A stretch of 64,000 bases of DNA, taken from NCBI RefSeq assembly GCF_000002075.1, contig NW_004797290.1, positions 1,472,743-1,536,742 of the forward strand. Direction: 5' to 3'. Below, piece after piece: positions 31,629 through 60,316 of the stretch; position 1 is the stretch's first letter, and every line of letters starts with the position of its first letter. The notes beneath the pieces were generated by a model. That model did not search any database, was not told the DNA's origin, and saw only the letters and a program-made list of their open reading frames with translations. Source of the DNA: Aplysia californica (lineage: Eukaryota). Made by a program: the position numbers and the translations under genes.

Positions 31629-31634
31629 TTTAAT
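31629..31634 (-). terminator. Candidate ATTAAA poly(A) signal of the progranulin transcript
   Basis: Plus strand tttaat, ~1.2 kb downstream of the last GRN exon, followed on the - strand by U-rich sequence. Not verifiable without RNA data. Confidence 0.3.
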
Positions 31635-32735: not shown

Positions 32736-32894
32736 TTAAATTAGCCCCAATGAGTGCGACACATTCCACAGCAATGTGGCAGGTGTCTTGCTGAGCCAAG
32801 AGGTGATCTGGTCTCCCGTCACACAGGTCTACTGGATCAGGTCACATCAGAAGCCATTAGGGCAGCAATACCTGAAGTCAGAGAAGCATATAGC
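32736..32894 (-). pseudogene. Decayed granulin C-half exon, probably the terminal exon: [50 protein letters not shown]
   Basis: catcag acceptor. Aligns residue for residue with the intact C-half exons but has in-frame TGA (32849-32847), TAG (32831-32829) and a CC-to-CF change. Confidence 0.8.
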
Positions 32895-35800
32895 CTGATG
32901 AGTCACTGAGCAAGGAACAACAAAACATATACTCAACGCTTTACCAGTCACTAGTTCTCATATTGGGAACTTTCTACTTTTTATAAATTGAAACTGGTGA
33001 AGTGGGCACATACTCTACTCAAAAAAGCTGCAAAGCAAGGTAAAAGAAAGTTTAAATCTCTGAAACGAAATCTTTGAGCAAAAAGCTGTGTGACTATTGA
33101 ATATTAAATAGTAGTGAATACTTCTTAGAGACAAATTTCATAACTCTTGTTGGCTCCACTTATCATTCTGTCTAGTAATCATCAACTTCAACTCGTATTT
33201 AACGCAGTGATATAGACCTATAACTTTATGACGGGTTGAGAAAAATTAAATAAAAATCATTTATCGAATTTAAAAAAACATACGCCATTCGAATGGCTTC
33301 AAATAGCTGTGAATAGGGCAACAATCTTGAATGTTGAATAGCAAAATCAAATGGGCACTGCTCTAATACAGACTCCTACACTAGGAAGGAGTCCATCTCA
33401 TTTCAGTTAAAAAACAGGGCAAACAATAATCACGGTTCCGAGATAAAGTGCAAGCTATTGACTTGTATGGCAACAGGTCAAACACAAGCTGCTGGCATTT
33501 ATGAATCATTTGCTACGGAGCAACAGTGTCTGCTTTCCAAGTTTGTATCTCCAGTTTCTGAGACATGTGAGCTGGATTCTAAAACTTCTACATTGTTTGC
33601 TAATGCCATCAATATAGAGCAGAAAAAACTCACAGGAGTTGCAGGTTCCTTGTTGAACCAAGAGAGAACATCTCCACCCCTGATGCATTTTCCATGAGCA
33701 ACATCACACTTGTAGCCGTTGGGGCAGCAGTGAAGATGGTCAGAGCAGCATGTAGCCTGGGCAAAAACATAAAAAAGTCTAACTCAGATTTCTTCATCTT
33801 ATAATTTGTTGCACAGAATAACAAGCACAGACAAATAAGGGTCCTTTTTCTGTTCTCATTCCTCGCCAAAAATGTCCACCCACCATCTGTTCAATTTCTT
33901 GTGCACATAGTGGCTTTCCAGTGTAAAAGAGAATGTTCCCTGTTGATGCAAGCTTTACAGTAAAGCTACAGCTTAATGCCATTGATCTATTTTTGTCAGA
34001 GTCAAGCTGACAATTGAGGAACCATTGTGGGAGCAACAATGTGTGTGTTTCAGCCGTGTTGAACTCTGAGACGGCATTTTCTAACAGCAAGATAAGACCG
34101 GGTTGGACAGCAAAGAGTTAAATCAAAACGCATAAAGAATAAAACAAGTTAACTTTAAAGCGAAAATCCTTTCTAATAATTATAATAAATGACATTTATA
34201 TAGCGCTCAATCCCGAATAAAGTACTCAGGCTCTGAGCGCTTTACAATACCGTACAACATACAACAGTAAAATAAATCGTTGTGTTCTCACTAAAGAAAA
34301 TTATTCCAAATATTCATCTCATTAATTTAAAAACAGAAACGACTTCAGCTGACATTCGAATGAATCAAAAGATGTGATCTCTCTCAAAGTACTTGGTAAA
34401 GCATTCCAGATTTTGGGGCCTTGGTATTGAAAAGCCCTTTCACCCGTTGTTTTAAGTTTCATAGATGGTAAAATAAATTTCTTTTTGTCAGCTGATGACC
34501 TTAAACTACGAGTTGGAATGTACAGTCTTAATAGATTTGATATATATGATAAAAACCATTCTAACATATATATCAACTAGAAAATATATGTCATTGAATT
34601 TTGAACTCACTGATGGCAATGGACAGCAGCCATATTGTCCAGAAGCAAGTTGACAACAGGTGGTTCCATCAGGGCAGTAAGATGTTCCTCCTGGGCACAC
34701 CACATGCTCTACCTCAGGTTTGGGGGCAATCTGAAACATTTCAAATATTCACTTAGTTCTCTTCAGAATAAATTAGAGCCTGACAGATTGCTTAACATGA
34801 CGAATGGTATTCTTCATAAAAAAAGACACAGATCTTTATTTTTCTTATCAAGCTTGATATCTCATTTTAATGTAAACTTCTTTTCACAGAGGGAACAGTA
34901 AGCACACTGACACAATACAGTAGTCTCTGCCTAAGATCCCACCGCTTACGATCCCGGTTCACTAAAGATCCCGCTGTTTTAAGAAAACAGAATTTTTGCT
35001 ATACAAAAGTCACCCCTAAGATCCCGCTCTGATCCACTCTGAAGGTAAACATTTGGCAAAGATCCCGCATTTCTGATCATAATTTATGGAGCAAACACCC
35101 GGGTGGGCACAACCGATCAACCAAGAGTGAAAAGTTGAGATCAATGAACTGGCCGTAGTGTCAAAGATCAGCCTTCGCTCCAGGTGGGATCACATCGTGC
35201 TGTGAACTCTTCCCTGACCAATGCAGCAGTTTTCTCTATTCCTGAGTTTGCGTGACAGACTGAATTTTTATTTTTGTGGTCACAACGTAATGGTGCGTAA
35301 CGACAAAGACAAGGGAACTTGGTCAGAGAAGGAAGGCTATAAATTTTCGACAGGTAAAGAGGAGGGATAAGCGTAGATCTTGAGACTCACGATAGGAAAA
35401 TAAGTGAAAATGGCACGCCTCATGTCACTATGTACTGTGATAGGCCAATTAGTTAACTACTCTTTATTCGCCATATGTCATAAATCCACCCAAGGGGCAC
35501 GTCAGTTCATTTTCGAGCGGAGGGAGAACATTTTACCAATTTGAGCCTTAACATGGGTCACCGTAGATTCTTCCCTGGGTTCATCGGCTAAGGTCCCGCA
35601 TTTTCCTTGCTCCCGAGCACCGGGATCTTAGGCGGAGACTACTGTAATTAATGACCGGAGGAAAACCAAGACAGACAAACAAAACAGAGGTACTGTAAAG
35701 AAGTAGAACCAACCAGTGGTCCTACAACCAAGTATGTGTACTTTTTGGGGGGGTTTTCGGTGTATTTTTTAAATACAACACCCTTCATGAAAAGGAAAAC

Positions 35801-38800
35801 CCAGAAAAAAGAAAAACTTCCACTTCAAAGGCGTGAAAATTTAAGAAACACATCAATGTCATTGTTCTGCCAAAGAAGAAAATCCATAACATCATTCACA
35901 CAAAATTAACTTCCGTTGCAAACAACACATATCATCATAAATGAATTGAAGCAAGAGTAAGTAATATTTTGGTACCTCAGTGGCAGGTTCCTTGTCGAAC
36001 CAAGAGAGAATGTCTCCACCCCTGATGCATTTTCCATGAGCAACATCACACTTGTAGCCGTTGGGGCAGCAGTGAAGATGGTCAGAGCAACATGTAGCCT
36101 GAGCAAAGAATACAGGTTTTCCATGGTTACGATAAAGTGAGAATTTTCAACAGCTTCTGCAGCATATCAGATTTTATGAATCATTAAGAGACGTTGAATA
36201 TCAAATTTTCAACGAGAGGTGTTTTTTGTAAATAGCCTACTATCAAACCAGCTGTAACAGCCACCACTATAAGACAATTACCTGCCACTTCCCATATCCT
36301 CCCTCCTTTTTTTTTTTAAAATCATTAAAATGAAATGTAAGAGACAGCCACCTGTCTAAGATGGCCATTTTTGTCCTTGGCAATGGGTAGCTGTCTTTGA
36401 CAATTTCAACTGTGCAAGTTTACAAAATTTCAGAAACAAGAAAGAAGAGCTATGAAGCCATCAACAGAAGTACGTCAAATACATTAAGAGTAAATTAATG
36501 TGTAAAAATAGGAAGGATAACTGACCATAACATCGACAGCAAAAATTGCTCAGACCAGTCATGTTTTATATCTGTCGCAGCAGTATCTATTTCAGCAAGT
36601 AGTTTATAAATAATATGAAGTGGGACAAAACCTCCATTTAACATTCTCAAATAGAGGTTGATACACAATAATATGACAAACACCGTCCTGTGTGCAAACA
36701 GCGGTACATCAAAACAGTACCAACAATCTTTTACATCTCAGGATTTATGTCTACACTGCTTACTAGGCATCTCACTTCCCATGAAAACATGGCACAGTTG
36801 TCATCCACCTGTTAAATATTTGCCCCATGTACTGACTAATCTTTGAATGTCAGCATCTGTGGTGAAATGGTTAGGCTTTTCATTGTTGCACGTAGAAGAC
36901 GCAAGTTCAATTCCCACGTTGGGAGGTATTTAAAAGTGTTTCTGCCAATCTACAAAGAAGCGTATGCTATTCAGCTCATGTTGGCAATGACATGTAGGGT
37001 CAAAGCAGCCCATCTCCTAAAAGATCCAAATACAACCACTTCCCCCACTGCATTTTTTTCTCTATTTTAATAACACCGTTCAAGATGCCCACCTGTTTAA
37101 GACAACCACTTTTCTCTTTGACAATGGGAGACCATTTTCAACAATTTTGACTATGCACAACACAAGCCAGCCTATCACAGTTCATGTTAAACGTATTTAC
37201 TCAATCAGAAAAAATTACCGATGGTCGAGGACAGCAGCCATATTGTCCAGAAGACAGCTGACAACAGGTGCTTCCATCGGGACAGAAGGAAGATCCTCCT
37301 GGGCACACTACACGGTCTACCTCAGCTTTGGGAGAAATCTGTGCAATGCAACATAAGAACTGATTAAAAGGAAAACGACAGTATCGGAGTATACATACAT
37401 TTTCTCATTTGTTTTTCTTTAGAAAAAGCTACTCTAAACCAAAATGGAAATTTAAAAATATAACCTCTGTTAAAGGAACAGCAAGTTAATACCTTTACAT
37501 TAGAACTCACACAATATAATGTGCTTTGTCTTTCAAAAACAAAGGTCAGGTACCTTGGTACAAATCTTCTTTGATGTAATATGAAAAAAACACACTATTT
37601 ATTTCATTATAAAGAAGCAATAAAATGTGACATGAAGTATAAAGTAAAATATCAGAACCCAGATAAGAATTAAAACTGAATATCTTGTCAACTTATTTAC
37701 AAAGTTGAATTTACTCACTGGAGTGGCCACTTTTTTGGTCATCCATGATAGAATGTCTCCACCCCTGAGGCATTTTCCATGAGCAACATCACACTTGTAG
37801 CCGTTGGGACAGCAGTGAAGATGGTCAGAGCAGCATGTAGCCTGAGGACAATGGTAAAAAAAAATTAAAAACATGCCATGAAATTGGATATAGCATGATG
37901 ATTCATAGGTGTGGAAAAATATTGTAACATTTCGACAGTCCCATCTTCATTGTATAGAGACAACTGATGTGCCAGATTGACGAGTGAAAAGTTTTCAAGT
38001 TTGTGTGTGAGATTAAGTGACATTTCAAACTCACAGTAAAGTACACCTTTACAAGGACATTTGCTTGCTAAGAAAAAAACTGAAGAAAAAAAAACCTCAT
38101 AGCACAAAAAATGGGTGGGTACAAGCTTCACTTGTGCTCCTGGTAGGAGAGGCGACAACTCGTGTTCGGCAAGCCTCAAATGTACCAATTCCTTATTCTC
38201 CAAAACACAGGTGACATTATACACAGTATCATATCAATTTAGATCAGCCATGGCATGGTGACTGTGCATTGGTGTAATATTGTGCATAATGTCGGTAAAT
38301 TCTTTTGTATGAATTTTGTATGTATGAATTAATTTAACTATGTATGTGTGTTTGGAAAGCCAACTATTCCCATTTGGATCATAATCATCACTAAAAGAAA
38401 CCAAAAACAAAATCTGCAGTACGTCAAGAACTACAAGCTCCTATTTGTACTACATGTGTAGCCAGCACCTTATTTTGAGGAAACATAACATACCTGTGGC
38501 AAAGGACAGCAGCCATACTGTCCAGAAGCAAGTTGACAACAGGTGGTTCCATCAGGGCAGTAAGATGTTCCTCCTGGGCACACCACATGCTCTACTTTGG
38601 TCTCAATCTATATAAGGCAGAAAAAGCATTGACAAAGATCTGGATGCTATGCAAAACTGTTAAGGGGTCTGCTGCTGTGCATGTTCTTATCATGACTTCA
38701 AAATCAGTACAAAATCTTTAAAAAGTTTTCCTATGCATAAGCCCTCTACCTATTAAAATGTTGGAACATTTATAAAAATAGAAACATTTTTTTTTCCCAG

Positions 38801-41800
38801 TTAAACACATTTGTGAGGTGTCGTGGTGAAATCAGGCGCTTGTAAAAATAATGAAAGTAAAGAAAACAGCATTTTTCTTACCATTTGGCAACTTTTATCA
38901 AATTGTTATTTTTTTGCTAAGGCTAATCACTTTAACTTTAAAATGTTGATTAAAGGTACAAAAAATATAAATTTACAGTTTACGAGGACTTTCAAGCTTT
39001 AAATGTCACCCAACTTTGGTGGCTATTTTCTTGCTAATTTTACCTCCGAAACCACATGACCCTCAACTTCTTCAATCCAAAATATCTGGACTTTTATTGA
39101 AGATGGATCAGTAATTGTTTTTTCAAAGCAAGACAATAAACAAGCTTTAAGATGATACCATTAAGTCCATATGCCCCAAAGCGCTTGATTTCACCACGTC
39201 CTGACACATGTACATCTAGTATTGATTCTAGCAAATATAGACGATGTGACTGAAACAAAATATGAAATCCAACAACCACAAGTATTTGTAATGGCATAAT
39301 ATTCTGCCAACAACACAGTAAATTATTATGCTACGTAAACAACAAGAATCATTTCTCATTTTTTAAAGCATGCACCCTGTTTCAACAGAATTCACACTTA
39401 TTAACATATACATCAATTATACAAAATGGGACGAACTACTGAGGAATTCCAGTTTTTCACACAATCAAACGGATAGAACTTTTAAAAGTTCAAAAGGCTA
39501 AAGCAATTTCCACTATGTAAACATCTACAGCACTGATTTTATCATTCTTACCTCAGTGGCAGGTTCCTTGTTGAACCAAGAAAGAACATCTCCACCCCTG
39601 AGGCATTTTCCATGAGCAACATCACACTTGTAGCCGTTGGGGCAGCAGTGAAGATGGTCAGAGCAGCATGTAGCCTTAGGATAATGGTGAAAAAACAAAT
39701 TCAAATCATACCATGAAGTTGGATAGTGAACGATGATTCATATAGTGGAAAAAGATTGCAATATTTTAACAGTACCATCATGTAAGGAAAAACTGCTGTG
39801 CAAGCATGATCAATTGAAAGTTTCAAAGTTTGTGTGAAATTTCAATCTATCTCACAGCAAAAAAATACCAATACTTTACAAAGACATTGCTTGCTAGTTA
39901 TTCAGAAAAAAAAAAGCTGATGACAAAATTTCCATAATTTAGCTTCAGATGGACTGACTTCTTATTTTCCCACATCAACTGTACATCATACATAACACCA
40001 TCTAATGTAAACGTGCCATTGTGTATTGACTGGATGGGTAGGTTTGATATTGTAAATTATGCAATATTGGTCTATTCTATTTTGTATAAATTAATTTAAC
40101 TATATATGGTAAGTGAAATATTCCTATAGGGTATCAATGAAACCAACCAAACCAAACTGTCAAGAACTGAAAGCTTCTACTACTATCACGTCAGTGGTCA
40201 ATGTCAGGGGCCAGAACAAGTAGTCAGCTTTATTTTGAGGAAACACAACATACCTGTGGCAAAGGACAGCAGCCATACTGTCCAGAAGCAAGTTGACAAC
40301 AGGTGGTTCCATCAGGGCAGTAAGATGTTCCTCCTGGGCACACCACATGCTCTACTTTGGTCTCAATCTATACATGGCAGAAAAAACCCCCAGTGATGAT
40401 CACTGACACAAATCACGATATGATCCACATACTCTGGGTCTGCATGCTAACCAGAACAGATAAGGAGTCTGCTGCAGTGCATATTCTCACAAAGATCTCA
40501 AAATCTTTTGAAAGGCATCCTATACTTAAAGAGTGTTTTCCAGTGAAAATATTATCTTCAAAACATTTCCTTGCACGTTAGTTGTAATGCAGACTTTTGT
40601 ATCGCTCTTACTGATGTATACAAGACATAAACCTCACACTTGGGTCTAGATGCTAAACAAAAACCATTTAGGGATCTTTCTGCGGTGCACATTTTCTCAC
40701 AAAAACCTCAAAATCAATAGAATCTACAAAATATTTCAGAAATCTTGTCATACTTAAGGCCCTATTCAATAGGAACTGTCAAAGCATTAACAAAAACAGA
40801 AAGATTTTTTTCAAGCAAAACATATTTATGATGTGATTGAAACAAAATACAAAATTTAACAATAGCAAATATTTGTAAAGGCTTGATATTCTCACAATAA
40901 CAAGTAAAATATGTTGCCATATAAACAAAAAGAAAAATTTATCAATTATAAGTAAGCAGTCTGTTTGAAGAGAATTGCACTTATAAACATATTATGTGGT
41001 AATTATATGAATAGGACGCACTACTGAGAAAGCCAAGTTTTTCAAACAACAAAACTGATAGACCTTCTAAAAGTTTAAAAGGTTACAGCAATTTTCACAA
41101 TGAAAAGACCTAGCAGCACTGATTTTGTCATTCTCACCTCAGTGGCAGGTTCCTTGTTGAACCAAGAGAGAACATCTCCACCCCTGAGGCATTTTCCATG
41201 AGCAACATCACACTTGTAGCCGTTGGGGCAGCAGTGAAGATGGTCAGAGCAGCATGTAGCCTTAAAAAAATTAACCAAAAAACCAAATTCCAAATGTGCC
41301 ATAAAGTTGGACACAGCATAATGATTATATAGTGGAAAAAGAACACAACGTTTCAATAGTTCTATCAAGTAAGAAAAACTGCTCTGCAAGCATGATCAGT
41401 TAAAAGCTTAAAAGTTTGTGTGAGACTTCAGTCTATCTCCCAGCCAAGTAATACAAATACTTCACCAGGACATTGCTTGCTAGTAATTCAGGAAAAAGAG
41501 CATAAGACAAAATTCCCATAACACAAAAAGTGGGAGGGTGCAAGCTAAACTTGTGCTCCCTGTATGAGGGACTGCAAGTTCTACATTGGGCATACTTCAG
41601 ATAGACTGACCCCTTATTCTCCAATATCATCGGTACATCATACACAGTAGCATCCAATGTAAATGCGCCATGGTGTATTGACTGTCTGCATAGGTTTGAT
41701 ATTGTACATGATGCAATATTGGTAAATTCTATAATGTACAAATTATTATAATAACCAAGCATATATAATTAGAGAAATATTACCATAGAGATCGATGAAA

Positions 41801-44800
41801 CCAGCCAAAACCAAACTGTACAGTATGGCAAAAACTACAAGCTTCTATTTCTACCACATCAGTGGCCAGGGAAGGTAGACAACATTATTTTGAGGAAACA
41901 CAACATACCTGTGGCAATGGACAGCAGCCATACTGTCCAGAAGCAAGTTGACAACAGGTGGTTCCATCAGGGCAGTAAGATGTTCCTCCTGGGCACACCA
42001 CATGCTCTACTTTGGTCTCAATCTATACAAGGAAGAAAAAAAAACCCAATCATGATCACAGATACAAAAACATTATATGACCCACATACTTAGGATCTGG
42101 ATGCTATGCAAAACTGTTAAGGGGTCTGCTGCTGTGCATGTTCTTATCATGACTTCAAAATCAGTACAAAATCTTTAAAAAGTTTTCCTATGCATAAGCC
42201 CTCTACCTATTAAAATGTTGGAACATTTATAAAAATAGAAACATTTTTTTTTTCCAGTTAAACACATTTGTGAGGTGTCGTGGTGAAATCAGGCGCTTGT
42301 AAAAATAATGAAAGTAAAGAAAACAGCATTTTTCTTACCATTTGGCAACTTTTATCAAATTGTTATTTTTTTGCTAAGGCTAATCACTTTAACTTTAAAA
42401 TGTTGATTAAAGGTACAAAAAATATAAATTTACAGTTTACGAGGACTTTCAAGCTTTAAATGTCACCCAACTTTGGTGGCTATTTTCTTGCTAATTTTAC
42501 CTCCGAAACCACATGACCCTCAACTTCTTCAATCCAAAATATCTGGACTTTTATTGAAGATGGATCAGTAATTGTTTTTTCAAAGCAAGACAATAAACAA
42601 GCTTTAAGATGATACCATTAAGTCCATATGCCCCAAAGCGCTTGATTTCACCACGTCCTGACACATGTACATCTAGTATTGATTCTAGCAAATATAGACG
42701 ATGTGACTGAAACAAAATATGAAATCCAACAACCACAAGTATTTGTAATGGCATAATATTCTGCCAACAACACAGTAAATTATTATGCTACGTAAACAAC
42801 AAGAATCATTTCTCATTTTTTAAAGCATGCACCCTGTTTCAACAGAATTCACACTTATTAACATATACATCAATTATACAAAATGGGACGAACTACTGAG
42901 GAATTCCAGTTTTTCACACAATCAAACGGATAGAACTTTTAAAAGTTCAAAAGGCTAAAGCAATTTCCACTATGTAAACATCTACAGCACTGATTTTATC
43001 ATTCTTACCTCAGTGGCAGGTTCCTTGTTGAACCAAGAAAGAACATCTCCACCCCTGAGGCATTTTCCATGAGCAACATCACACTTGTAGCCGTTGGGGC
43101 AGCAGTGAAGATGGTCAGAGCAGCATGTAGCCTTAAAAAAATTAACCAAAAAACCAAATTCCAAATGTGCCATAAAGTTGGACACAGCATAATGATTATA
43201 TAGTGGAAAAAGAACACAACGTTTCAATAGTTCTATCAAGTAAGAAAAACTGCTCTGCAAGCATGATCAGTTAAAAGCTTAAAAGTTTGTGTGAGACTTC
43301 AGTCTATCTCCCAGCCAAGTAATACAAATACTTCACCAGGACATTGCTTGCTAGTAATTCAGGAAAAAGAGCATAAGACAAAATTCCCATAACACAAAAA
43401 GTGGGAGGGTGCAAGCTAAACTTGTGCTCCCTGTATGAGGGACTGCAAGTTCTACATTGGGCATACTTCAGATAGACTGACCCCTTATTCTCCAATATCA
43501 TCGGTACATCATACACAGTAGCATCCAATGTAAATGCGCCATGGTGTATTGACTGTCTGCATAGGTTTGATATTGTACATGATGCAATATTGGTAAATTC
43601 TATAATGTACAAATTATTATAATAACCAAGCATATATAATTAGAGAAATATTACCATAGAGATCGATGAAACCAGCCAAAACCAAACTGTACAGTATGGC
43701 AAAAACTACAAGCTTCTATTTCTACCACATCAGTGGCCAGGGAAGGTAGACAACATTATTTTGAGGAAACACAACATACCTGTGGCAATGGACAGCAGCC
43801 ATACTGTCCAGAAGCAAGTTGACAACAGGTGGTTCCATCAGGGCAGTAAGATGTTCCTCCTGGGCACACCACATGCTCTACTTTGGTCTCAATCTATACA
43901 AGGAAGAAAAAAAAACCCAATCATGATCACAGATACAAAAACATTATATGACCCACATACTTAGGATCTGGATGCTATGCAAAACTGTTAAGGGGTCTGC
44001 TGCTGTGCATGTTCTTATCATGACTTCAAAATCAGTACAAAATCTTTAAAAAGTTTTCCTATGCATAAGCCCTCTACCTATTAAAATGTTGGAACATTTA
44101 TAAAAATAGAAACATTTTTTTTTTCCAGTTAAACACATTTGTGAGGTGTCGTGGTGAAATCAGGCGCTTGTAAAAATAATGAAAGTAAAGAAAACAGCAT
44201 TTTTCTTACCATTTGGCAACTTTTATCAAATTGTTATTTTTTTGCTAAGGCTAATCACTTTAACTTTAAAATGTTGATTAAAGGTACAAAAAATATAAAT
44301 TTACAGTTTACGAGGACTTTCAAGCTTTAAATGTCACCCAACTTTGGTGGCTATTTTCTTGCTAATTTTACCTCCGAAACCACATGACCCTCAACTTCTT
44401 CAATCCAAAATATCTGGACTTTTATTGAAGATGGATCAGTAATTGTTTTTTCAAAGCAAGACAATAAACAAGCTTTAAGATGATACCATTAAGTCCATAT
44501 GCCCCAAAGCGCTTGATTTCACCACGTCCTGACACATGTACATCTAGTATTGATTCTAGCAAATATAGACGATGTGACTGAAACAAAATATGAAATCCAA
44601 CAACCACAAGTATTTGTAATGGCATAATATTCTGCCAACAACACAGTAAATTATTATGCTACGTAAACAACAAGAATCATTTCTCATTTTTTAAAGCAAG
44701 CACCCTGTTTCAACAGAATTCACACTTATTAACATATACATCAATTATACAAAATGGGACGAACTACTGAGGAATTCCAGTTTTTCACACAATCAAACGG

Positions 44801-50800: not shown

Positions 50801-53800
50801 AACCAAACCAAACTGTCAAGAACTGAAAGCTTCTACTACTATCACGTCAGTGGTCAATGTCAGGGGCCAGAACAAGTAGTCAGCTTTATTTTGAGGAAAC
50901 ACAACATACCTGTGGCAAAGGACAGCAGCCATACAGTCCAGAAGCAAGTTGACAACAGGTGGTTCCATCAGGGCAGTAAGATGTTCCTCCTGGGCACACC
51001 ACATGCTCTACTTTGGTCTCAATCTATACAAGGAAGAAAAAAAAACCCAATCATGATCACAGATACAAAAACATTATATGACCCACATACTTAGGATCTG
51101 GATGCTATGCAAAACTGTTAAGGGGTCTGCTGCTGTGCATGTTCTTATCATGACTTCAAAATCAGTACAAAATCTTTAAAAAGTTTTCCTATGCATAAGC
51201 CCTCTACCTATTAAAATGTTGGAACATTTATAAAAATAGAAACATTTTTTTTTTCCAGTTAAACACATTTGTGAGGTGTCGTGGTGAAATCAGGCGCTTG
51301 TAAAAATAATGAAAGTAAAGAAAACAGCATTTTTCTTACCATTTGGCAACTTTTATCAAATTGTTATTTTTTTGCTAAGGCTAATCACTTTAACTTTAAA
51401 ATGTTGATTAAAGGTACAAAAAATATAAATTTACAGTTTACGAGGACTTTCAAGCTTTAAATGTCACCCAACTTTGGTGGCTATTTTCTTGCTAATTTTA
51501 CCTCCGAAACCACATGACCCTCAACTTCTTCAATCCAAAATATCTGGACTTTTATTGAAGATGGATCAGTAATTGTTTTTTCAAAGCAAGACAATAAACA
51601 AGCTTTAAGATGATACCATTAAGTCCATATGCCCCAAAGCGCTTGATTTCACCACGTCCTGACACATGTACATCTAGTATTGATTCTAGCAAATATAGAC
51701 GATGTGACTGAAACAAAATATGAAATCCAACAACCACAAGTATTTGTAATGGCATAATATTCTGCCAACAACACAGTAAATTATTATGCTACGTAAACAA
51801 CAAGAATCATTTCTCATTTTTTAAAGCATGCACCCTGTTTCAACAGAATTCACACTTATTAACATATACATCAATTATACAAAATGGGACGAACTACTGA
51901 GGAATTCCAGTTTTTCACACAATCAAACGGATAGAACTTTTAAAAGTTCAAAAGGCTAAAGCAATTTCCACTATGTAAACATCTACAGCACTGATTTTAT
52001 CATTCTTACCTCAGTGGCAGGTTCCTTGTTGAACCAAGAAAGAACATCTCCACCCCTGAGGCATTTTCCATGAGCAACATCACACTTGTAGCCGTTGGGG
52101 CAGCAGTGAAGATGGTCAGAGCAGCATGTAGCCTTAGGATAATGGTGAAAAAACAAATTCAAATCATACCATGAAGTTGGATAATGAACGATGATTCATA
52201 TAGTGGAAAAAGATTGCAATATTTTAACAGTACCATCATGTAAGGAAAAACTGCTGTGCAAGCATGATCAATTGAAAGTTTCAAAGTTTGTGTGAAATTT
52301 CAATCTATCTCACAGCAAAAAAATACCAATACTTTACAAAGACATTGCTTGCTAGTTATTCAGAAAAAAAAAAAGCTGATGACAAAATTTCCATAATTTA
52401 GCTTCAGATGGACTGACTTCTTATTTTCCCACATCAACTGTACATCATACATAACACCATCTAATGTAAACGTGCCATTGTGTATTGACTGGATGGGTAG
52501 GTTTGATATTGTAAATTATGCAATATTGGTCTATTCTATTTTGTATAAATTAATTTAACTATATATGGTAAGTGAAATATTCCTATAGGGTATCAATGAA
52601 ACCAACCAAACCAAACTGTCAAGAACTGAAAGCTTCTACTACTATCACGTCAGTGGTCAATGTCAGGGGCCAGAACAAGTAGTCAGCTTTATTTTGAGGA
52701 AACACAACATACCTGTGGCAAAGGACAGCAGCCATACAGTCCAGAAGCAAGTTGACAACAGGTGGTTCCATCAGGGCAGTAAGATGTTCCTCCTGGGCAC
52801 ACCACATGCTCTACTTTGGTCTCAATCTATACATGGCAGAAAAAACCCCCAGTGATGATCACTGACACAAATCACGATATGATCCACATACTCTGGGTCT
52901 GCATGCTAACCAGAACAGATAAGGAGTCTGCTGCAGTGCATATTCTCACAAAGATCTCAAAATCTTTTGAAAGGCATCCTATACTTAAGAGTGTTTTCCA
53001 GTGAAAATATTATCTTCAAAACATTTCCTTGCACGTTAGTTGTAATGCAGACTTTTGTATCGCTCTTACTGATGTATACAAGACATAAACCTCACACTTG
53101 GGTCTAGATGCTAAACAAAAACCATTTAGGGATCTTTCTGCGGTGCACATTTTCTCACAAAAACCTCAAAATCAATAGAATCTACAAAATATTTCAGAAA
53201 TCTTGTCATACTTAAGGCCCTATTCAATAGGAACTGTCAAAGCATTAACAAAAACAGAAAGATTTTTTTCAAGCAAAACATATTTATGATGTGATTGAAA
53301 CAAAATACAAAATTTAACAATAGCAAATATTTGTAAAGGCTTGATATTCTCACAATAACAAGTAAAATATGTTGCCATATAAACAAAAAGAAAAATTTAT
53401 CAATTATAAGTAAGCAGTCTGTTTGAAGAGAATTGCACTTATAAACATATTATGTGGTAATTATATGAATAGGACGCACTACTGAGAAAGCCAAGTTTTT
53501 CAAACAACAAAACTGATAGACCTTCTAAAAGTTTAAAAGGTTACAGCAATTTTCACAATGAAAAGACCTAGCAGCACTGATTTTGTCATTCTCACCTCAG
53601 TGGCAGGTTCCTTGTTGAACCAAGAGAGAACATCTCCACCCCTGAGGCATTTTCCATGAGCAACATCACACTTGTAGCCGTTGGGGCAGCAGTGAAGATG
53701 GTCAGAGCAGCATGTAGCCTTAAAAAAATTAACCAAAAAACCAAATTCCAAATGTGCCATAAAGTTGGACACAGCATAATGATTATATAGTGGAAAAAGA

Positions 53801-56800
53801 ACACAACGTTTCAATAGTTCTATCAAGTAAGAAAAACTGCTCTGCAAGCATGATCAGTTAAAAGCTTAAAAGTTTGTGTGAGACTTCAGTCTATCTCCCA
53901 GCCAAGTAATACAAATACTTCACCAGGACATTGCTTGCTAGTAATTCAGGAAAAAGAGCATAAGACAAAATTCCCATAACACAAAAAGTGGGAGGGTGCA
54001 AGCTAAACTTGTGCTCCCTGTATGAGGGACTGCAAGTTCTACATTGGGCATACTTCAGATAGACTGACCCCTTATTCTCCAATATCATCGGTACATCATA
54101 CACAGTAGCATCCAATGTAAATGCGCCATGGTGTATTGACTGTCTGCATAGGTTTGATATTGTACATGATGCAATATTGGTAAATTCTATAATGTACAAA
54201 TTATTATAATAACCAAGCATATATAATTAGAGAAATATTACCATAGAGATCGATGAAACCAGCCAAAACCAAACTGTACAGTATGGCAAAAACTACAAGC
54301 TTCTATTTCTACCACATCAGTGGCCAGGGAAGGTAGACAACATTATTTTGAGGAAACACAACATACCTGTGGCAATGGACAGCAGCCATACTGTCCAGAA
54401 GCAAGTTGACAACAGGTGGTTCCATCAGGGCAGTAAGATGTTCCTCCTGGGCACACCACATGCTCTACTTTGGTCTCAATCTATACAAGGAAGAAAAAAA
54501 AACCCAATCATGATCACAGATACAAAAACATTATATGACCCACATACTTAGGATCTGGATGCTATGCAAAACTGTTAAGGGGTCTGCTGCTGTGCATGTT
54601 CTTATCATGACTTCAAAATCAGTACAAAATCTTTAAAAAGTTTTCCTATGCATAAGCCCTCTACCTATTAAAATGTTGGAACATTTATAAAAATAGAAAC
54701 ATTTTTTTTTTCCAGTTAAACACATTTGTGAGGTGTCGTGGTGAAATCAGGCGCTTGTAAAAATAATGAAAGTAAAGAAAACAGCATTTTTCTTACCATT
54801 TGGCAACTTTTATCAAATTGTTATTTTTTTGCTAAGGCTAATCACTTTAACTTTAAAATGTTGATTAAAGGTACAAAAAATATAAATTTACAGTTTACGA
54901 GGACTTTCAAGCTTTAAATGTCACCCAACTTTGGTGGCTATTTTCTTGCTAATTTTACCTCCGAAACCACATGACCCTCAACTTCTTCAATCCAAAATAT
55001 CTGGACTTTTATTGAAGATGGATCAGTAATTGTTTTTTCAAAGCAAGACAATAAACAAGCTTTAAGATGATACCATTAAGTCCATATGCCCCAAAGCGCT
55101 TGATTTCACCACGTCCTGACACATGTACATCTAGTATTGATTCTAGCAAATATAGACGATGTGACTGAAACAAAATATGAAATCCAACAACCACAAGTAT
55201 TTGTAATGGCATAATATTCTGCCAACAACACAGTAAATTATTATGCTACGTAAACAACAAGAATCATTTCTCATTTTTTAAAGCAAGCACCCTGTTTCAA
55301 CAGAATTCACACTTATTAACATATACATCAATTATACAAAATGGGACGAACTACTGAGGAATTCCAGTTTTTCACACAATCAAACGGATAGAACTTTTAA
55401 AAGTTCAAAAGGCTAAAGCAATTTCCACTATGTAAACATCTACAGCACTGATTTTATCATTCTTACCTCAGTGGCAGGTTCCTTGTTGAACCAAGAAAGA
55501 ACATCTCCACCCCTGAGGCATTTTCCATGAGCAACATCACACTTGTAGCCGTTGGGGCAGCAGTGAAGATGGTCAGAGCAGCATGTAGCCTTAAAAAAAA
55601 TTAAAAACATGCCATAAAGTTGGATATTGAACGATGATGATTCATATGGTGAGATTTCAACATTCCCATTTTAATAACACGTAAAGACAAACTTTTTTTA
55701 AAAAATCATTAAAATGTTCTAAGTTTGTGCGAGATTTTGTAGTAGAGGTTTTATGGCGCTCGAAACTGCATACGGTCATATGAGCGCCAGAAGATTAGAG
55801 GTGTTACAAGAGAGTAACAAACAGAAAAGAAGGAGGGGAGATAAGTACGATAGATGTTTGATAGGAAAGAAGAAGCAAACCACACCAGAGCACCCACCAA
55901 TCACCCGCAAGTAACACTTATAACTTATTAGGTCACCTGCTTTCTAGTCACAAAGGAAAAAGTGAACACACAAAAAAACAACTCTCATAGCAGAAAAAGT
56001 GGGTGGCTACAAGCTACACTTGAGCTCATTATACTAGTCATTGCGACTTCTGCATTGGGCATTCACCTAAAATGTACCTCATACACAATATCAAACCAAT
56101 AAAGACGAACCATGGCATGTTGACAATCTATCTGTGCTGGTGTGATATTGTGCGGAGCACAGATAGTCAACTTTACTTTGAGGAAACATAGCATACCTGT
56201 GGCAATGGACAGCAGCCNNNNNNNNNNNNNNNNNNNNNNNNNNNNNNNNNNNNNNNNNNNNNNNNNNNNNNNNNNNNNNNNNNNNNNNNNNNNNNNNNNN
56301 NNNNNNNNNNNNNNNNNNNNNNNNNNNNNNNNNNNNNNNNNNNNNNNNNNNNNNNNNNNNNNNNNNNNNNNNNNNNNNNNNNNNNNNNNNNNNNNNNNNN
56401 NNNNNNNNNNNNNNNNNNNNACTTGATCTAAAGTTTGTGTGAGATGTTTCAGTCTATATCAAAAAGAGAAGACAAAAAAAAAGAACAAACAACACAGCAG
56501 AAAAAGTGTTTAGGTGCAAGCTAAACTTGTGCTCCCTGTATGAGGGACTGCAAGTTCTACTTGGGCATACTTCAGATAGACTGACCCCTTATTCTCCAAT
56601 ATCATCGGTACATCATACACAGTAGCATCTCAATGTAAATGCGCCATGGTGTGTTGACAATATCTACAATGGTGTCATATTTTGTACAGCGTTGGTTAAT
56701 TATTTTACGGATGAATTTATTTAACAACGTATGTATGGTAAGCCAACTATTCCATAAGGATCGATGAAACCAGCCAAAACCAAACTGTACAGTATGGCAA

Positions 56801-59800
56801 AAACTACAAGCTTCTATTTCTACCACATCAGTGGCCAGCACAGATAGTCAACTTTACTTTGAGGAAACATAGCATACCTGTGGCAATGGACAGCAGCCAT
56901 ACTGTCCAGAAGCAAGTTGACAACAGGTGGTTCCATCAGGGCAGTAAGATGTTCCTCCTGGGCACACCACATGCTCTACTTTGGTCTCCATCTATACATG
57001 GCAGAAAAAAACGGTGATGATCACTGATACAAATAGATTAAGTGACCCATGTACTCGGGGTCTAGATGCTAAAAAAAACCTGAAGGAGGCTGTTGCAGTG
57101 TATTTTTTTTACCAAAAACTCAAAACTTATACCAAATCTTTTGAAAGTCTTCCCAAACTTAAGGCCCTTTTCCAGTGTAAATATTATTCTTAAAATTTTC
57201 TCTTGTACATTATTTTGTCTTGTTTGGGTTAAGAGAAGCACACCAACAAAACACAAAAAGGAAATAACAGAGGCAAAGAAAAGAAGAAGGACCTAACAGT
57301 TGCGCCCTCTAACCATCCGTTCGTACATTAGTAGTTGTTGTTAGCGATCCAGGTACATTAGTAGTAATGTAGACTTTTGTATCAGTTTTACAATATAAAC
57401 CAAACGTAGCATTTTATTTTGTTTATTTCTAAGCTAGTGGCCCTGAAACTAAGGGGAAGCACTGCCATCTTGGATTTTCTCAGGAACTTAAGGGTTTCAA
57501 TTTTCTGAAATCTTTCATGATCGATAATGTGTCATTTTTTAACAGCGTGTTCTATTGGTGTTGTAGCACAGTAACAGACCCATTTTATAGAGTGTTTGGA
57601 TGGAAAAATGTTGGCAGTAAGATAACATTTTTTTAAAAGAATAAGAAAAGACAAACACATCTGCCTCAATCAGCCTTTATAAAAGTAAAATAACAGCAAA
57701 TTCTCCCAAAAGCTTTGCAACTTAATAAAGGAATTCTCACAAGGCATCATACAAACTTTGAAGAAAACACGACCAACCTAGTAGGAAATAAACATAATTT
57801 TGCTTTACATTTGTTGAGACTATGTAAAAACATTTATAACAACAGAAACATTTTTGTCCAGCTTAACAATTTTAGGCAGAATAATAGATTCTCCCGCACA
57901 AATATTCGTAATGGCTGGTATTCTCACTTAAAATACAGCAGTATATTCTACTACATAAAACAAAAAGTATAATTTCTTTTTTTCAAGTAAGCACTCTCTG
58001 TTTTAACAGAATCTGCACTTGTATAGGTTGTTCACTTTCGTCTGTCCATGTTTAAAAAATTCACACTCGTTTATTAATTTGCCAACACGCATGAAACTAT
58101 GCTTGGCATACCTGTAGGCCAGCAATAAACAAAAATATTTTTTCTGAGAATTCTTGTTCCAGTAATAAAAATTGTTTTTTGGGGGGGCTCTATGTTAAAT
58201 GTTGTACTTTAGATGCATACGAGTACACAGGAAAACAACAATAAATGGTGTACAGTAACTAAACTACAAACTGCTCATTTTGAGACATCGACACCACCCT
58301 GCCCCCACATTTCAGTGTAAGCTTATAGATTTCCTCTCAAGACAGTCTAGACATCTCCAAGTGAGTCTTGATAAGTACCCATCCGGTTTTTGGATCGTGT
58401 ATTATAGAGGCATGCCATGTCAAAATGTGGAGTTGACGAAGATGTTGATGTTTTAGGTGTATGCTGTAGATCCCCTGTTAGTTGGTTTTTTTTTTACCCA
58501 TTATAGACTAACATCAAAGGAAACATGTCAGAATTTTAGTTTGCAGTAACTTTCATTAATGGGCTTTTAGTTTAGATTCTGTCGGTCATCCAACTTTGGA
58601 GCACAGCACACATGCAAAGACCAGGGGCGATAAGACAGAGCAATTTATTTTTATTTTGTTTTAACCATGGTCAGATGAAAGTGAACAAGCTATAAGAAAA
58701 GCACCAATTGCTCAAAATGGAAATCACTGCTTAGGAATTCAACTTTTTAACAAAACCAAACTGACACACTTATCAAAAGGTTAAATCAAAATTTGCGATG
58801 TAGAGATCTTGCAGCATCATCCTCACCTCAGTGGCAGGCTCCTTCTTGAATAAAGACAGAACATCTCCACCCCTGGTGCAGGTACCAGCAGAAACATCAC
58901 ACTTGTAGCCGTTGGGGCAGCAGTGAAGATGGTCAGAGCAGCATGTAGCCTTAGGACAATGGTGAAATGGTGAAAAAACAAAATTCAAAACATGCCATCA
59001 AGTTGGATATAGAAGAATGATTCATATGGCGGACAAAATAGTGCGACATTTGACCTATTCCCATCTTCATAATGTCAGGACAAAGGTTTTTTTGTGTTTT
59101 TTTTTTGGGGGGGGGGGGGGTGGGGAGGGAGGGAGGTTGAGTAAAGAGAAGCACATTGACACAATGATGGTCATTTTAAGCTGAGAAAAAGTAGGACAGA
59201 CAGACATAATAAATGGAAAGCAAAGAAGTAAGACATATCTGTGGCACCCGCCAAGCACCCAATATATAAGGACTAACTGAATGCAAACTTGATCTAAAGT
59301 TCATGTGACATGTTTCAGTCTATATCAAAAACAGAAGACAAAAAAAAAGAACAAACAACACAGCAGAAAAAGTGTTTAGGTAAAAGCTTCACTCCTGCTC
59401 ACTGTAAGAAGGAATGCAATTCCTGCTTGGGTATACATCAAACATACCGACTCCTTTTTCTCCAAAACCAACATTTCATCATACGCATTGACATATCAAG
59501 GCAGACAAGCCATTGTGTGTTGACCATATCTACAATGGTGTCATATTTTGTACAGCGTTGGTTAATTATTTTACGGATGAATTTATTTAACAACGTATGT
59601 ATGGTAAGCCAACTATTCCATAAGGATCTATAAAACCAGCTAAAACCAAACTATGCAATTTGTCAAGACCTACAAACTTCTATTACCTCTACATCAGTGA
59701 CCAGGACAGGTAGTCAACCTTATTTTGAGGAAACACAACATACCTGTGGCAATGGACAGCAGCCATACTGTCCAGAAGCAAGTTGACAACAGGTGGTTCC

Positions 59801-59851
59801 ATTAGGGCAGTAAGATGTTCCTCCTGGGCACACCACACGCTCTACAGAATT
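32847..59851 (-). CDS. GRN: Progranulin (granulin precursor) gene, multi-exon, at least 14-15 granulin modules; 5' end with signal peptide not identified
   Basis: Alternating N-half and C-half exons splice in phase 0 to give C-x6-C-x5-CC-x8-CC-x6-CC-x5-CC-x5-C-x6-C ([31 protein letters not shown]|[24 protein letters not shown]), the canonical 12-Cys granulin motif. Confidence 0.95.
33634..33756 (-). CDS. GRN: Granulin C-half exon B1 ([41 protein letters not shown])
   Basis: 123 nt, ccag acceptor, gtgag donor, phase 0. Confidence 0.93.
34174..34548 (-). mobile_element. 5'-truncated LINE 3' fragment of the L2/Crack group (end of ORF2, 3' UTR and tail)
   Basis: Peptide [10 protein letters not shown]...[47 protein letters not shown] fits the conserved C-terminus of CR1/L2-group ORF2. 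The 3' end reads agcgctcagag...tgagcgctatataaat followed by an (ATT)n-like tail. Confidence 0.85.
34611..34730 (-). CDS. GRN: Granulin N-half exon A1 ([40 protein letters not shown])
   Basis: 120 nt, tttcag acceptor, gtgagt donor, phase 0. Confidence 0.93.
34918..35644. mobile_element. pogo/Tigger-like MITE, 727 bp, in a granulin intron
   Basis: TA TSD. 23-bp TIR cagtagtctctgcctaagatccc versus reverse complement cagtagtctccgcctaagatccc (1 mismatch). Repeated gatccc motifs. Confidence 0.9.
35976..36098 (-). CDS. GRN: Granulin C-half exon B2 (...[21 protein letters not shown])
   Basis: 123 nt, ctcag acceptor, gtacc donor, phase 0. Confidence 0.92.
36853..37030 (+). mobile_element. tRNA-derived SINE relic; a similar decayed head lies at ~23849-23910
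   Basis: A-box-like tggtgaaatggttag and B-box-like gttcaattccc at tRNA spacing, but no intact cloverleaf. Confidence 0.5.
37219..37338 (-). CDS. GRN: Granulin N-half exon A2, divergent ([40 protein letters not shown])
   Basis: 120 nt, cacag acceptor, gtaat donor, phase 0, all 6 Cys kept. Confidence 0.92.
37719..37841 (-). CDS. GRN: Granulin C-half exon B3 (...[21 protein letters not shown])
   Basis: 123 nt, ctcag acceptor, gtgagt donor. Confidence 0.92.
38494..38607 (-). CDS. GRN: Granulin N-half exon A3 ([38 protein letters not shown])
   Basis: 114 nt, tatag acceptor, gtatgt donor. Confidence 0.92.
38812..39208 (-). mobile_element. ~397-bp MITE in granulin intron type P; further copies start at ~42269, 44140, 47597, 49468, 51270 and 54727
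   Basis: ~29-bp imperfect TIRs: tgtgaggtgtcgtggtgaaatcaggcgct versus reverse complement tgtgtcaggacgtggtgaaatcaagcgct. Absent from the homologous Q intron. Confidence 0.75.
39552..39674 (-). CDS. GRN: Granulin C-half exon B4 ([41 protein letters not shown])
   Basis: 123 nt, taag acceptor, gtaag donor. Confidence 0.9.
40254..40367 (-). CDS. GRN: Granulin N-half exon A4
   Basis: 114 nt, same peptide as A3, AG/GT boundaries. Confidence 0.9.
41138..41260 (-). CDS. GRN: Granulin C-half exon B5
   Basis: 123 nt, same peptide as B4, taag/gtgag boundaries. Confidence 0.9.
41909..42022 (-). CDS. GRN: Granulin N-half exon A5
   Basis: 114 nt, same peptide as A3. Confidence 0.9.
43009..43131 (-). CDS. 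GRN: Granulin C-half exon B6
   Basis: 123 nt, same peptide as B4. Confidence 0.88.
43780..43893 (-). CDS. GRN: Granulin N-half exon A6
   Basis: 114 nt, same peptide as A3. Confidence 0.88.
44880..45002 (-). CDS. GRN: Granulin C-half exon B7
   Basis: 123 nt, same peptide as B4. Confidence 0.88.
45582..45695 (-). CDS. GRN: Granulin N-half exon A7
   Basis: 114 nt, same peptide as A3. Confidence 0.88.
46466..46588 (-). CDS. GRN: Granulin C-half exon B8
   Basis: 123 nt, same peptide as B4. Confidence 0.88.
47237..47350 (-). CDS. GRN: Granulin N-half exon A8
   Basis: 114 nt, same peptide as A3. Confidence 0.88.
48337..48459 (-). CDS. GRN: Granulin C-half exon B9
   Basis: 123 nt, same peptide as B4. 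Confidence 0.88.
49108..49221 (-). CDS. GRN: Granulin N-half exon A9
   Basis: 114 nt, same peptide as A3. Confidence 0.88.
50208..50330 (-). CDS. GRN: Granulin C-half exon B10
   Basis: 123 nt, same peptide as B4. Confidence 0.88.
50910..51023 (-). CDS. GRN: Granulin N-half exon A10 (SGQYG to SGLYG variant)
   Basis: 114 nt; plus strand reads atacagtcc instead of atactgtcc (CAG to CTG). Confidence 0.88.
52010..52132 (-). CDS. GRN: Granulin C-half exon B11
   Basis: 123 nt, same peptide as B4. Confidence 0.88.
52713..52826 (-). CDS. GRN: Granulin N-half exon A11 (SGLYG variant)
   Basis: 114 nt, same Q-to-L change as A10. Confidence 0.88.
53596..53718 (-). CDS. GRN: Granulin C-half exon B12
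   Basis: 123 nt, same peptide as B4. Confidence 0.88.
54367..54480 (-). CDS. GRN: Granulin N-half exon A12
   Basis: 114 nt, same peptide as A3. Confidence 0.88.
55467..55589 (-). CDS. GRN: Granulin C-half exon B13
   Basis: 123 nt, same peptide as B4. Confidence 0.9.
56197..56217 (-). CDS. GRN: Granulin N-half exon A13, only the 3' end (GCCPLPQ) visible; truncated by the assembly gap
   Basis: Plus strand gcatac|ctgtggcaatggacagcagcc followed by Ns. Confidence 0.85.
56218..56420. other. Assembly gap (203 N) inside the granulin array
   Basis: Run of N. Confidence 1.
56878..56991 (-). CDS. GRN: Granulin N-half exon A14 ([13 protein letters not shown]...PLPQ)
   Basis: 114 nt, tatag acceptor, gtatgc donor. 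Confidence 0.9.
58024..58692. mobile_element. TA-flanked MITE, ~669 bp, in a granulin intron
   Basis: ~34-bp imperfect TIR taggttgttcactttcgtctgtccatgtttaaaa versus reverse complement tagcttgttcactttcatctgaccatggttaaaa, flanked by TA. Confidence 0.75.
58827..58949 (-). CDS. GRN: Granulin C-half exon B14, divergent ([41 protein letters not shown])
   Basis: 123 nt, taag acceptor, gtgagg donor. Confidence 0.92.
59744..59851 (-). CDS. GRN: Granulin N-half exon A15, the most 5' one recognised ([36 protein letters not shown])
   Basis: 108 nt with ttcacag acceptor (an alternative AG lies about 10 nt inside), gtatgt donor; carries an NGT sequon. Confidence 0.88.

Positions 59852-60265: not shown

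Positions 60266-60315
<50 letters not shown>
60266..60315. repeat. (GT)n microsatellite
   Basis: About 25 GT units. Confidence 0.95.

Positions 60316-60316
<1 letters not shown>

What the first reader, a model, noticed from the sequence alone, without database searches (positions are those of the whole stretch)
33634..59851. Giant progranulin polyprotein with at least 14-15 granulin modules, most of them the same peptide
Seen: 15 N-half and 14 C-half exons, all phase 0, encoding 12-Cys granulins. B4-B13 encode one identical peptide. A3-A12 do too, except for one Q-to-L change in A10 and A11. Established: human progranulin has 7.5 mutually divergent modules and is cleaved in the linkers to release granulins. 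Inference: this gene may act as a dosage amplifier, like a polyubiquitin-style precursor releasing about 10 copies of one granulin, and may vary in copy number between individuals.
Basis: partly seen in the sequence, partly recalled or inferred. Interest (0 to 1): 0.8.

Follow-up and report, generated by a model that had tools for sequence, protein, structure and literature searches.

The report
Sea-hare progranulin gene, repeated granulin modules
This is the single progranulin gene of the sea hare Aplysia californica: a real, expressed chain of at least 15-17 granulin modules, about ten of them identical, and that oddity was already published for this very gene in 2015.

Summary
On the minus strand lie 14 complete N-half exons (108-120 nt), a 15th cut off by the assembly gap, and 14 C-half exons (123 nt). 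All are phase 0 with AG/GT borders and together they encode classical 12-Cys granulins. Ten C-halves are identical, and ten N-halves are identical except for Q-to-L in two.

The gap is not continuous. Its low side ends inside an N-half exon, so it hides at least one C-half exon, and its 203 N are too few.

The array is a 5.3-kb higher-order repeat of three module types. Introns differ by 20-33% between types, but exons differ by at most 2 of 237 nt.

RNA contigs of one public run cover the exons at depths in the thousands and the introns at 8 or less. The repeated linker junction is about 6.7 times deeper than the unique 3' junctions. Independent DNA contigs have depths that roughly follow the assembled copy numbers, so assembler inflation is unlikely.

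Palfree et al. 2015 described it as having 11 of 13 modules identical, and called such repeats a recurrent feature of progranulins.

The dosage-amplifier idea remains untested. The scan's own earlier notes on this same stretch cover the array mosaic and the fossil last exon.

The parts
31611..32871 (-). Terminal exon: four codons, stop TAA at 32857-32859, then 3' UTR
   Evidence: An RNA contig of X17 runs from the last C-half exon into the acceptor at 32871 (loose end at 41141; sequence). The low end at 31611 is taken from the scaffold coordinate printed in PMC4527844 and was not tested here.
32736..32909 (-). Fossil C-half granulin exon with two in-frame stops; the terminal exon starts inside it in another frame
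33634..34730 (-). Module 14: N-half exon 34611-34730, C-half exon 33634-33756 (unique linkers)
   Evidence: X17 RNA contigs join B13 to A14 (depth 1709.6) and A14 to B14 (depth 1756.5). Pfam.
35976..37338 (-). Module 13: N-half 37219-37338 (most diverged N-half in the window), C-half 35976-36098
   Evidence: X17 contig over 35981-36042 at depth 1376.6.
37719..38607 (-). Module 12: N-half 38494-38607 (core peptide), C-half 37719-37841 (core granulin part, diverged linker)
   Evidence: the high-identity repeat ends at 38637.
39552..40367 (-). Module 11, type gamma: N-half 40254-40367, C-half 39552-39674
   Evidence: exon bins at depths in the thousands in X17.
41138..42022 (-). Module 10, type beta: N-half 41909-42022, C-half 41138-41260
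   Evidence: X17 joint 41138 to 40367 at depth 11652.2 shows C-half to next N-half splicing.
43009..43893 (-). Module 9, type alpha: N-half 43780-43893, C-half 43009-43131
   Evidence: Exon table; intron lengths 648 and 986.
44880..45695 (-). Module 8, type gamma: N-half 45582-45695, C-half 44880-45002
   Evidence: intron lengths 579 and 986; lies 5328 bp from module 11.
46466..47350 (-). Module 7, type beta: N-half 47237-47350, C-half 46466-46588
   Evidence: introns 648 and 770; C at synonymous position 93 of the C-half, as in the other beta modules.
48337..49221 (-). Module 6, type alpha: N-half 49108-49221, C-half 48337-48459
   Evidence: its introns are identical to those of module 9.
50208..51023 (-). 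Module 5, extra gamma copy carrying Q to L: N-half 50910-51023, C-half 50208-50330
   Evidence: its introns differ from those of module 4 by one indel only, so this is a very recent one-module duplication.
52010..52826 (-). Module 4, gamma with Q to L: N-half 52713-52826, C-half 52010-52132
53596..54480 (-). Module 3, type beta: N-half 54367-54480, C-half 53596-53718
55467..56217 (-). Module 2-prime: last 21 nt of an N-half exon (56197-56217) cut by the gap, a 607-nt intron, C-half 55467-55589
   Evidence: 56156-56217 is a 100% copy of 56837-56898, the tail of an N-half exon plus the intron start.
56218..56420 (.). Assembly gap inside the array; hides the rest of one N-half exon, at least one C-half exon and at least one linker intron
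   Evidence: The letters were not filled in or looked up.
56421..56991 (-). Module 2 front half: N-half 56878-56991 and 457 nt of its intron running into the gap; its C-half is not visible
   Evidence: this intron is 85% like the a-type intron; Pfam.
58827..59851 (-). Module 1: N-half 59744-59851 (108 nt), C-half 58827-58949, both diverged from the core
38637..55604 (-). Higher-order tandem repeat: a unit of three modules (5328 bp), about 3.3 copies
   Evidence: Self-BLAST: 38637-45815 against 43965-51145 is 99.57% identical over 7181 bp; 38637-43145 against 51095-55604 is 99.85% identical.

Best explanation
This is the single progranulin (Grn) gene of Aplysia californica, on the minus strand. 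It runs from outside the window's high end to about 31611. It encodes a chain of granulin modules, each built from one N-half exon and one C-half exon, all phase 0. At least 15 modules lie in the window and at least 17 in the gene. The first and last modules are diverged. The middle is a recently amplified higher-order tandem repeat of three module types that encode the same 79-residue unit. Shown here: the exons, frames and splice sites; the repeat structure; strong expression and the predicted splicing in one RNA sample; rough agreement of copy number in an independent DNA sample. Inferred from other progranulins: the product is secreted or lysosomal, and proteases cut its linkers to give many copies of one granulin of about 8-9 kDa. 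Inferred from the repeat structure: the array grew by unequal crossing-over between module units. The exons are kept alike by gene conversion or by crossovers at the exons, together with selection on the peptide, while the introns of the three module types drifted 20-33% apart.
For: Exons, phases and peptides. Pfam Granulin split exactly at the exon joint (positions 1-17 and 18-42). The closest solved chains are human granulin A and related granulins. Repeat structure. Exon islands of identity inside diverged introns. RNA (run X17): exon bins at depths of about 6900-17400, and intron bins at 0-8 apart from a dispersed repeat at 38700-39300. The same run gives joints at the predicted splice sites: core C-half to N-half at 11652.2, B13 to A14 at 1709.6, A14 to B14 at 1756.5, and B14 to the terminal exon. 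DNA (run X11, other sample and study): unique contigs at 3.7-4.7, repeat contigs at 15.8-23.7, which is 3.3-4.5 per assembled copy for three of the four repeat contigs. Every Granulin match in the 927,310,431-base genome lies at this one locus. Identity: AplCal3.0 is 927.3 Mb. The Aplysia Grn is placed at scaffold positions 1504353-1556930, and here the granulin exons lie at contig positions 1506376-1543952. One granulin gene is listed for Aplysia.
Against: No full-length transcript was seen, and short-read contigs collapse the repeats. The A-to-B splice inside core modules was not listed as a joint; it is shown only for module 14. The RNA junction ratio of about 6.7 is below the 10 identical junctions in the assembly. 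That could reflect 3' bias, exon skipping (all exons are symmetric) or fewer copies in that animal. Two polyA RNA runs (X21, X22, about 15 million reads each) had no read on any exon, so expression is restricted. The signal-peptide exon is only a candidate. The C-half partner of one upstream N-half exon is not visible; it may lie in N stretches. The tool itself warns that contig depth is a poor measure of copy number, and X11 is only about 4x deep.
Confidence: 0.9

Rival explanations
1. The array is inflated by the assembler: a few real modules were written out many times in this old scaffold-level assembly.
For: The repeat copies are 99.6-99.9% alike over 4.5-7 kb. Modules 4 and 5 differ by a single indel in their introns. 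There is an assembly gap inside the array.
Against: The modules fall into three types with introns 20-33% apart, arranged in a regular order. An independent DNA run gives contig depths that scale with the assembled 31-mer multiplicity (4.0, 4.5 and 3.3 per copy against 3.7-4.7 for unique flanks), and one segment is twice as deep as expected, not less. The RNA junction ratio is about 6.7. Short-read and Sanger assemblers collapse such repeats more often than they expand them. The gap also hides at least one more module.
Confidence: 0.05
2. The gene is real, but the giant protein is not the main product. Because every exon is phase 0 and symmetric, variable exon skipping makes a family of shorter isoforms with fewer modules.
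For: All exons are multiples of three. The core junction depth is only about 6.7 times that of the unique 3' junctions, although the assembly has 10 or more such junctions.
Against: No skipping joint with real depth was listed in X17, although identical exons make such joints invisible to short contigs. The 3' bias of polyA libraries, or a shorter array in that animal, explains the ratio equally well.
Confidence: 0.2
3. The identical modules have no dosage function. The array is a neutral, unstable by-product of unequal crossing-over in a gene whose exon structure tolerates any number of units.
For: Similar runs of near-identical modules arose independently in many animals, and their origin is called unclear. 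The higher-order repeat is very young, at 0-0.4% divergence.
Against: Exons of the three old module types stay within 2 of 237 nt of each other while their introns are 20-33% apart. This points to sustained homogenisation plus constraint on the peptide rather than drift alone.
Confidence: 0.3

Closest known systems
Aplysia californica Grn as described by Palfree, Bennett and Bateman 2015 (PMC4527844; protein model XP_005090713.1, gene listed as LOC101846478 in PMC9334734)
   Same: Same scaffold coordinates, split N and C exons, and a run of identical modules (reported as 11 of 13 identical, with a twelfth differing at 3 positions).
   Different: Here at least 17 N-half exons are counted in the gene (15 in the window). 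A gap hides at least one more C-half. A three-module higher-order repeat and exon-only identity are described. RNA and independent DNA support are added.
Other progranulins with tandem near-identical modules (Xenopus, lamprey, zebrafish GrnA, oyster, sea urchin, amphioxus, Nematostella), same paper
   Same: Diverged modules near the N-terminus and repeats of highly similar modules towards the C-terminus; growth by exon duplication.
   Different: In amphioxus and sea urchin the repeats lie in one large exon. Here every half-module is its own exon, and the number of identical units is among the highest reported.
Biomphalaria glabrata progranulin BgGRN (PMC7017051)
   Same: A gastropod progranulin of 12-Cys modules. 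The full-length form drives haemocyte proliferation, and elastase-released single modules of about 10 kDa trigger reactive oxygen production.
   Different: BgGRN has four different modules. The Aplysia gene has at least 17, most of them identical. No functional data exist for Aplysia.
Human GRN
   Same: Same domain and the same principle of two non-equivalent exons per module; a precursor cleaved in its linkers.
   Different: Human GRN has 7.5 mutually divergent modules and many fused C-plus-N exons. Here the N and C exons are all separate.
Polyubiquitin-type polyproteins
   Same: Head-to-tail identical units held alike by concerted evolution.
   Different: Granulin units are separated by linkers of 26 residues between cysteines, are extracellular or lysosomal disulfide knots, and have no known dedicated processing enzyme. 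This is an analogy only.

Membership tests
Granulin domain (Pfam PF00396) | Twelve cysteines in the pattern C, C, CC, CC, CC, CC, C, C with short spacers | tested here: met
   six Cys in each N-half and six in each C-half, spaced x6, x5, x8, x6, x5, x5, x6.
Granulin domain (Pfam PF00396) | Profile match above the curated cut-off (20.9 bits) | tested here: met
C-half exons score 31.6-37.8 bits alone; core N-half exons score 21.8-24.4 bits. The diverged N-halves (module 13 and the two upstream ones) fall below the cut-off on their own.
Progranulin gene | Modules encoded by non-equivalent N and C exons split in mid-domain | tested here: met
   N-half exons end at profile position 17 and C-half exons begin at 18. 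AG/GT borders, phase 0.
Progranulin gene | Exons spliced in series into one mRNA | tested here: met
   run X17: joints from core C-half to next N-half, B13 to A14, A14 to B14, and B14 to the terminal exon. A full-length transcript was not seen.
Progranulin gene | N-terminal signal peptide (secreted precursor) | tested here: inconclusive
   one candidate 34-codon exon, with a hydrophobic start and a phase-0 donor, lies about 12.7 kb beyond the window's high end. It has no RNA support, and N stretches hide parts of that region.
Progranulin gene | Proteolytic release of single granulins from the linkers | not testable with these tools
   Known for mammals and for Biomphalaria. There are no peptide data for Aplysia.
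Polyubiquitin-like dosage polyprotein | Identical units kept alike by concerted evolution | tested here: met
   at most 2 of 237 exon bases differ between module types whose introns are 20-33% apart.
Polyubiquitin-like dosage polyprotein | Units joined without spacer and released by a dedicated protease | tested here: not met
   26 residues lie between the last Cys of one module and the first Cys of the next, with no dibasic sites. Cleavage was not tested.

The most novel reading that the evidence does not exclude
The three module types are old, but their exons are actively homogenised (exon-sized conversion tracts or crossovers at exons) under selection for many copies of one granulin peptide. 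The array length differs between individual animals, so the amount of granulin released per precursor would be a variable, selectable trait in an immune or wound-repair factor.
Probability: 0.3. Interest if true: 0.5.

Novelty: already known. Interest (0 to 1): 0.3.

Why it matters
Why progranulins of many animals independently carry runs of identical modules is an open question that the 2015 survey itself raised. This locus is a clean case for testing it. It has three module types with old introns but near-identical exons, a very young three-module amplification, strong tissue-restricted expression, and hints of structural differences between individuals. For the genome annotation, the public protein model as reported in 2015 (13 modules) probably undercounts the gene, and the array is not closed in this assembly.

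Tried and rejected
- Tandem Repeats Finder found nothing in the array because its longest period is 500; self-BLAST was used instead.
- Two raw polyA RNA runs (X21, X22) gave no reads on any exon. The only reads fell on a dispersed repeat in the intron at 38700-39300. They therefore say nothing about splicing, only that expression is restricted.
- A wider motif scan found no further granulin exons elsewhere in the window apart from the fossil at 32736-32909.
- The C-half partner of the upstream N-half exon (2.5 kb beyond the window) was not found in readable sequence. It may lie in the N stretches, which were left alone.
- The first exon could not be fixed; there is only a candidate signal-peptide exon.
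- The supplements of the 2015 paper that are held as text do not mention Aplysia.
- For the same reason, and because novelty does not rest on absence of relatives, the large protein searches were not used.
- No structure or complex prediction was run; it would not have changed the verdict.
Full report
**What is there**

A motif scan of all six frames finds granulin half-motifs only on the minus strand between 33.6 and 59.9 kb. Reading the borders gives two alternating exon kinds.
- N-half exons are 114 nt in the core and 108 or 120 nt at the edges. They hold a short linker piece and the first six cysteines.
- C-half exons are always 123 nt. They hold the last six cysteines and 17 linker residues.
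- Every exon has an AG acceptor and a GT donor and a length divisible by three, so all are phase 0.

Pfam Granulin (PF00396) matches N-half exons at profile positions 1-17 and C-half exons at positions 18-42. The pair therefore forms exactly one domain. The nearest solved chains are human granulin A and related granulins. I did not scan or search the joined spliced product.

I number modules along the gene, from high to low coordinates. C-half exons 2-11 encode one identical peptide. N-half exons 3-12 do too, except for Q to L in modules 4 and 5. Among the core copies only three nucleotide positions vary: one non-synonymous and one synonymous in the N-half, and one synonymous in the C-half.

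**The gap**

The N run at 56218-56420 lies inside the array. On its low side the readable sequence begins with the last 21 nt of an N-half exon and its donor (56197-56217). The 62 nt at 56156-56217 are a perfect copy of the tail of N-half exon 2 plus its intron start. Beyond those 62 nt the two introns are unrelated, so these are two different modules.

On the high side of the gap, N-half exon 2 is followed by 457 nt of intron that run into the gap without a C-half exon. The gap therefore hides four things:
- the remainder of that intron;
- at least one C-half exon;
- at least one linker intron;
- 93 nt of an N-half exon.

That is roughly 0.8-1.2 kb at the least, against the 203 N written. The two sides are not continuous. 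The module count in the window is a minimum of 15. I did not fill in or look up the hidden letters.

**Extent of the gene**

- **3' end:** An RNA contig continues from the last C-half exon into an acceptor at 32871, inside a fossil C-half exon that carries two in-frame stops. In the frame used, the protein ends four codons later at TAA 32857-32859.
- **5' side:** A whole-genome Granulin scan found one more match 6.2 kb beyond the window. The fetched flank holds an N-half, a C-half and another N-half exon, all phase 0.
- **Missing partner:** The C-half partner of the nearer upstream N-half is not visible in readable sequence.
- **First exon:** A candidate signal-peptide exon lies about 12.7 kb beyond the window. 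It is unconfirmed.
- **Total:** The gene has at least 17 N-half exons.

**Repeat anatomy**

Self-BLAST shows a 5328-bp period. The stretch 38637-45815 matches 43965-51145 at 99.57% over 7181 bp, and 38637-43145 matches 51095-55604 at 99.85%.

Intron lengths and pairwise alignments define two kinds of intra-module intron (a, 648 nt; b, 579-580 nt). They also define two kinds of linker intron (x, 986 nt; y, 769-770 nt). Within a kind the copies differ by 0-0.2%. Between kinds they differ by 20% (a against b) and about 32% (x against y), with many indels.

The modules are therefore of three types: alpha (a,x), beta (a,y) and gamma (b,x). They are arranged as repeats of alpha-beta-gamma, with one extra gamma. 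Modules 4 and 5 share the Q-to-L change and differ by a single indel.

The exons of the three types differ by at most 2 of 237 nt, and identity decays within about 25 nt of the exon borders. At the intron divergence one would expect some 10-15 synonymous differences per module pair, so the exons are islands of identity. The two synonymous variants travel with the neighbouring downstream intron type.

My reading of the history is an inference. An old set of module types has had its exons kept alike by conversion or exon-anchored crossovers, together with selection. A very recent amplification of the three-module unit followed, and then a single-module duplication.

**Is it real and expressed?**

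Twenty public runs of one organism hold the stretch or a part of it. I laid four of them on 35901-41900.

- **Run X17 (RNA contigs):**
  - It covers the exon bins at summed depths of about 6900-17400 and the intron bins at 0-8. The exception is a dispersed repeat at 38700-39300.
  - Its contigs carry the predicted splices. The core C-half to next N-half joint (41138 to 40367) has depth 11652.2. The joint from module 13 C-half to module 14 N-half, which carries the inserted unique linker letters, has depth 1709.6. The module 14 N-half to C-half joint has depth 1756.5. The joint into the terminal exon is also present.
  - Identical junctions collapse into one contig, so the ratio of about 6.7 roughly measures core junctions per transcript relative to the unique 3' junctions. 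It shows that the central exons are in mature RNA.
  - The ratio is lower than the 10 junctions assembled. 3' bias, exon skipping or a shorter array in that animal could each explain this.
- **Runs X21 and X22 (raw polyA reads, about 15 million each):** They have no read on any exon, so expression is tissue- or state-restricted.
- **Run X11 (DNA contigs from another sample and study):**
  - It gives depths of 3.7-4.7 on unique sequence and 15.8-23.7 on repeat sequence.
  - Divided by the 31-mer multiplicity in the window, this is 4.0, 4.5 and 3.3 per assembled copy. For the y-type linker intron (40494-41165) it is 7.4-8.
  - One X11 contig joins 40676 to 39106, a mosaic of two linker-intron kinds that occurs nowhere in the window.
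  - At about 4x coverage this is coarse, and the tool warns that contig depth is no copy number.
  - Even so, it argues against assembler inflation. It is compatible with extra or different units in the gap or in other individuals.

**Identity and prior knowledge**

- The assembly has 927,310,431 bases in 4332 pieces, and the window is contig 20, positions 1472743-1536742.
- Aplysia californica AplCal3.0 is 927.3 Mb (PMC8861042).
- Palfree, Bennett and Bateman 2015 (PMC4527844) place the Aplysia Grn on a scaffold at 1504353-1556930, which brackets the exons found here. They state that 11 of its 13 modules encode identical polypeptides and a twelfth differs at three positions.
- An in-silico immune survey lists one granulin gene in Aplysia (PMC9334734). 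This agrees, where every Granulin match in the genome lies at this locus.
- An earlier follow-up note of this scan also calls this genome Aplysia.

**Function**

No functional data exist for this gene. In the snail Biomphalaria glabrata, a four-module progranulin drives haemocyte proliferation, and elastase cuts it into single modules of about 10 kDa that trigger reactive oxygen production (PMC7017051).

By analogy, the Aplysia precursor would give ten or more copies of one module of about 8-9 kDa per molecule. It is plausible and consistent with the exon-only homogeneity, but it is untested. The analogy with polyubiquitin is loose, because here 26 residues without dibasic sites lie between the last cysteine of one module and the first of the next.

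**Verdict**

The central claim was already published for this very gene, so the finding is already known.
- a higher minimum module count than the published 13;
- the demonstration that the gap hides at least one more module;
- the three-type higher-order repeat with exon islands of identity;
- the RNA-supported 3' end;
- a weak hint of structural variation between animals.

Noticed in passing
window 38700-39300: A dispersed repeat inside the linker intron between modules 11 and 12. It is the only part of the laid stretch with reads in the polyA runs X21 and X22 (on both strands, most running on into unlike sequence). It reaches summed depths up to about 46,000 in X17 and 1,550 in X11, so it is a high-copy, transcribed element of this genome.
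   Followed up: no
window 55786-55909, with 483-608 and 25940-26039: The intron of the module next to the gap carries a 100-127 bp piece that is 80-83% like two other places in the window, on the opposite strand. It is probably a short interspersed element, and it replaces most of the usual intron sequence.
   Followed up: no
L016:2526-2666 (2.5 kb beyond the window's high end): The upstream N-half exon is visibly far more G+C-rich than the 33-42% of the surrounding window, and it has a 17-residue Pro/Arg-rich lead-in. No matching C-half exon is readable between it and module 1.
   Followed up: partly
window 60266-60346: A (GT)40 microsatellite lies in the intron upstream of module 1.
   Followed up: no
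window 62923-63392 and several N runs in L016-L018: Many N stretches of 100-1600 bases lie in the 5' part of the gene, so the first exons and any further modules there cannot be judged from this assembly.
   Followed up: no
window 38536-38595: A 60-nt X17 contig with one changed letter, at depth 390, lies on N-half exon 12. It is either an expressed allele or a copy variant of the core N-half that the assembly does not hold.
   Followed up: no
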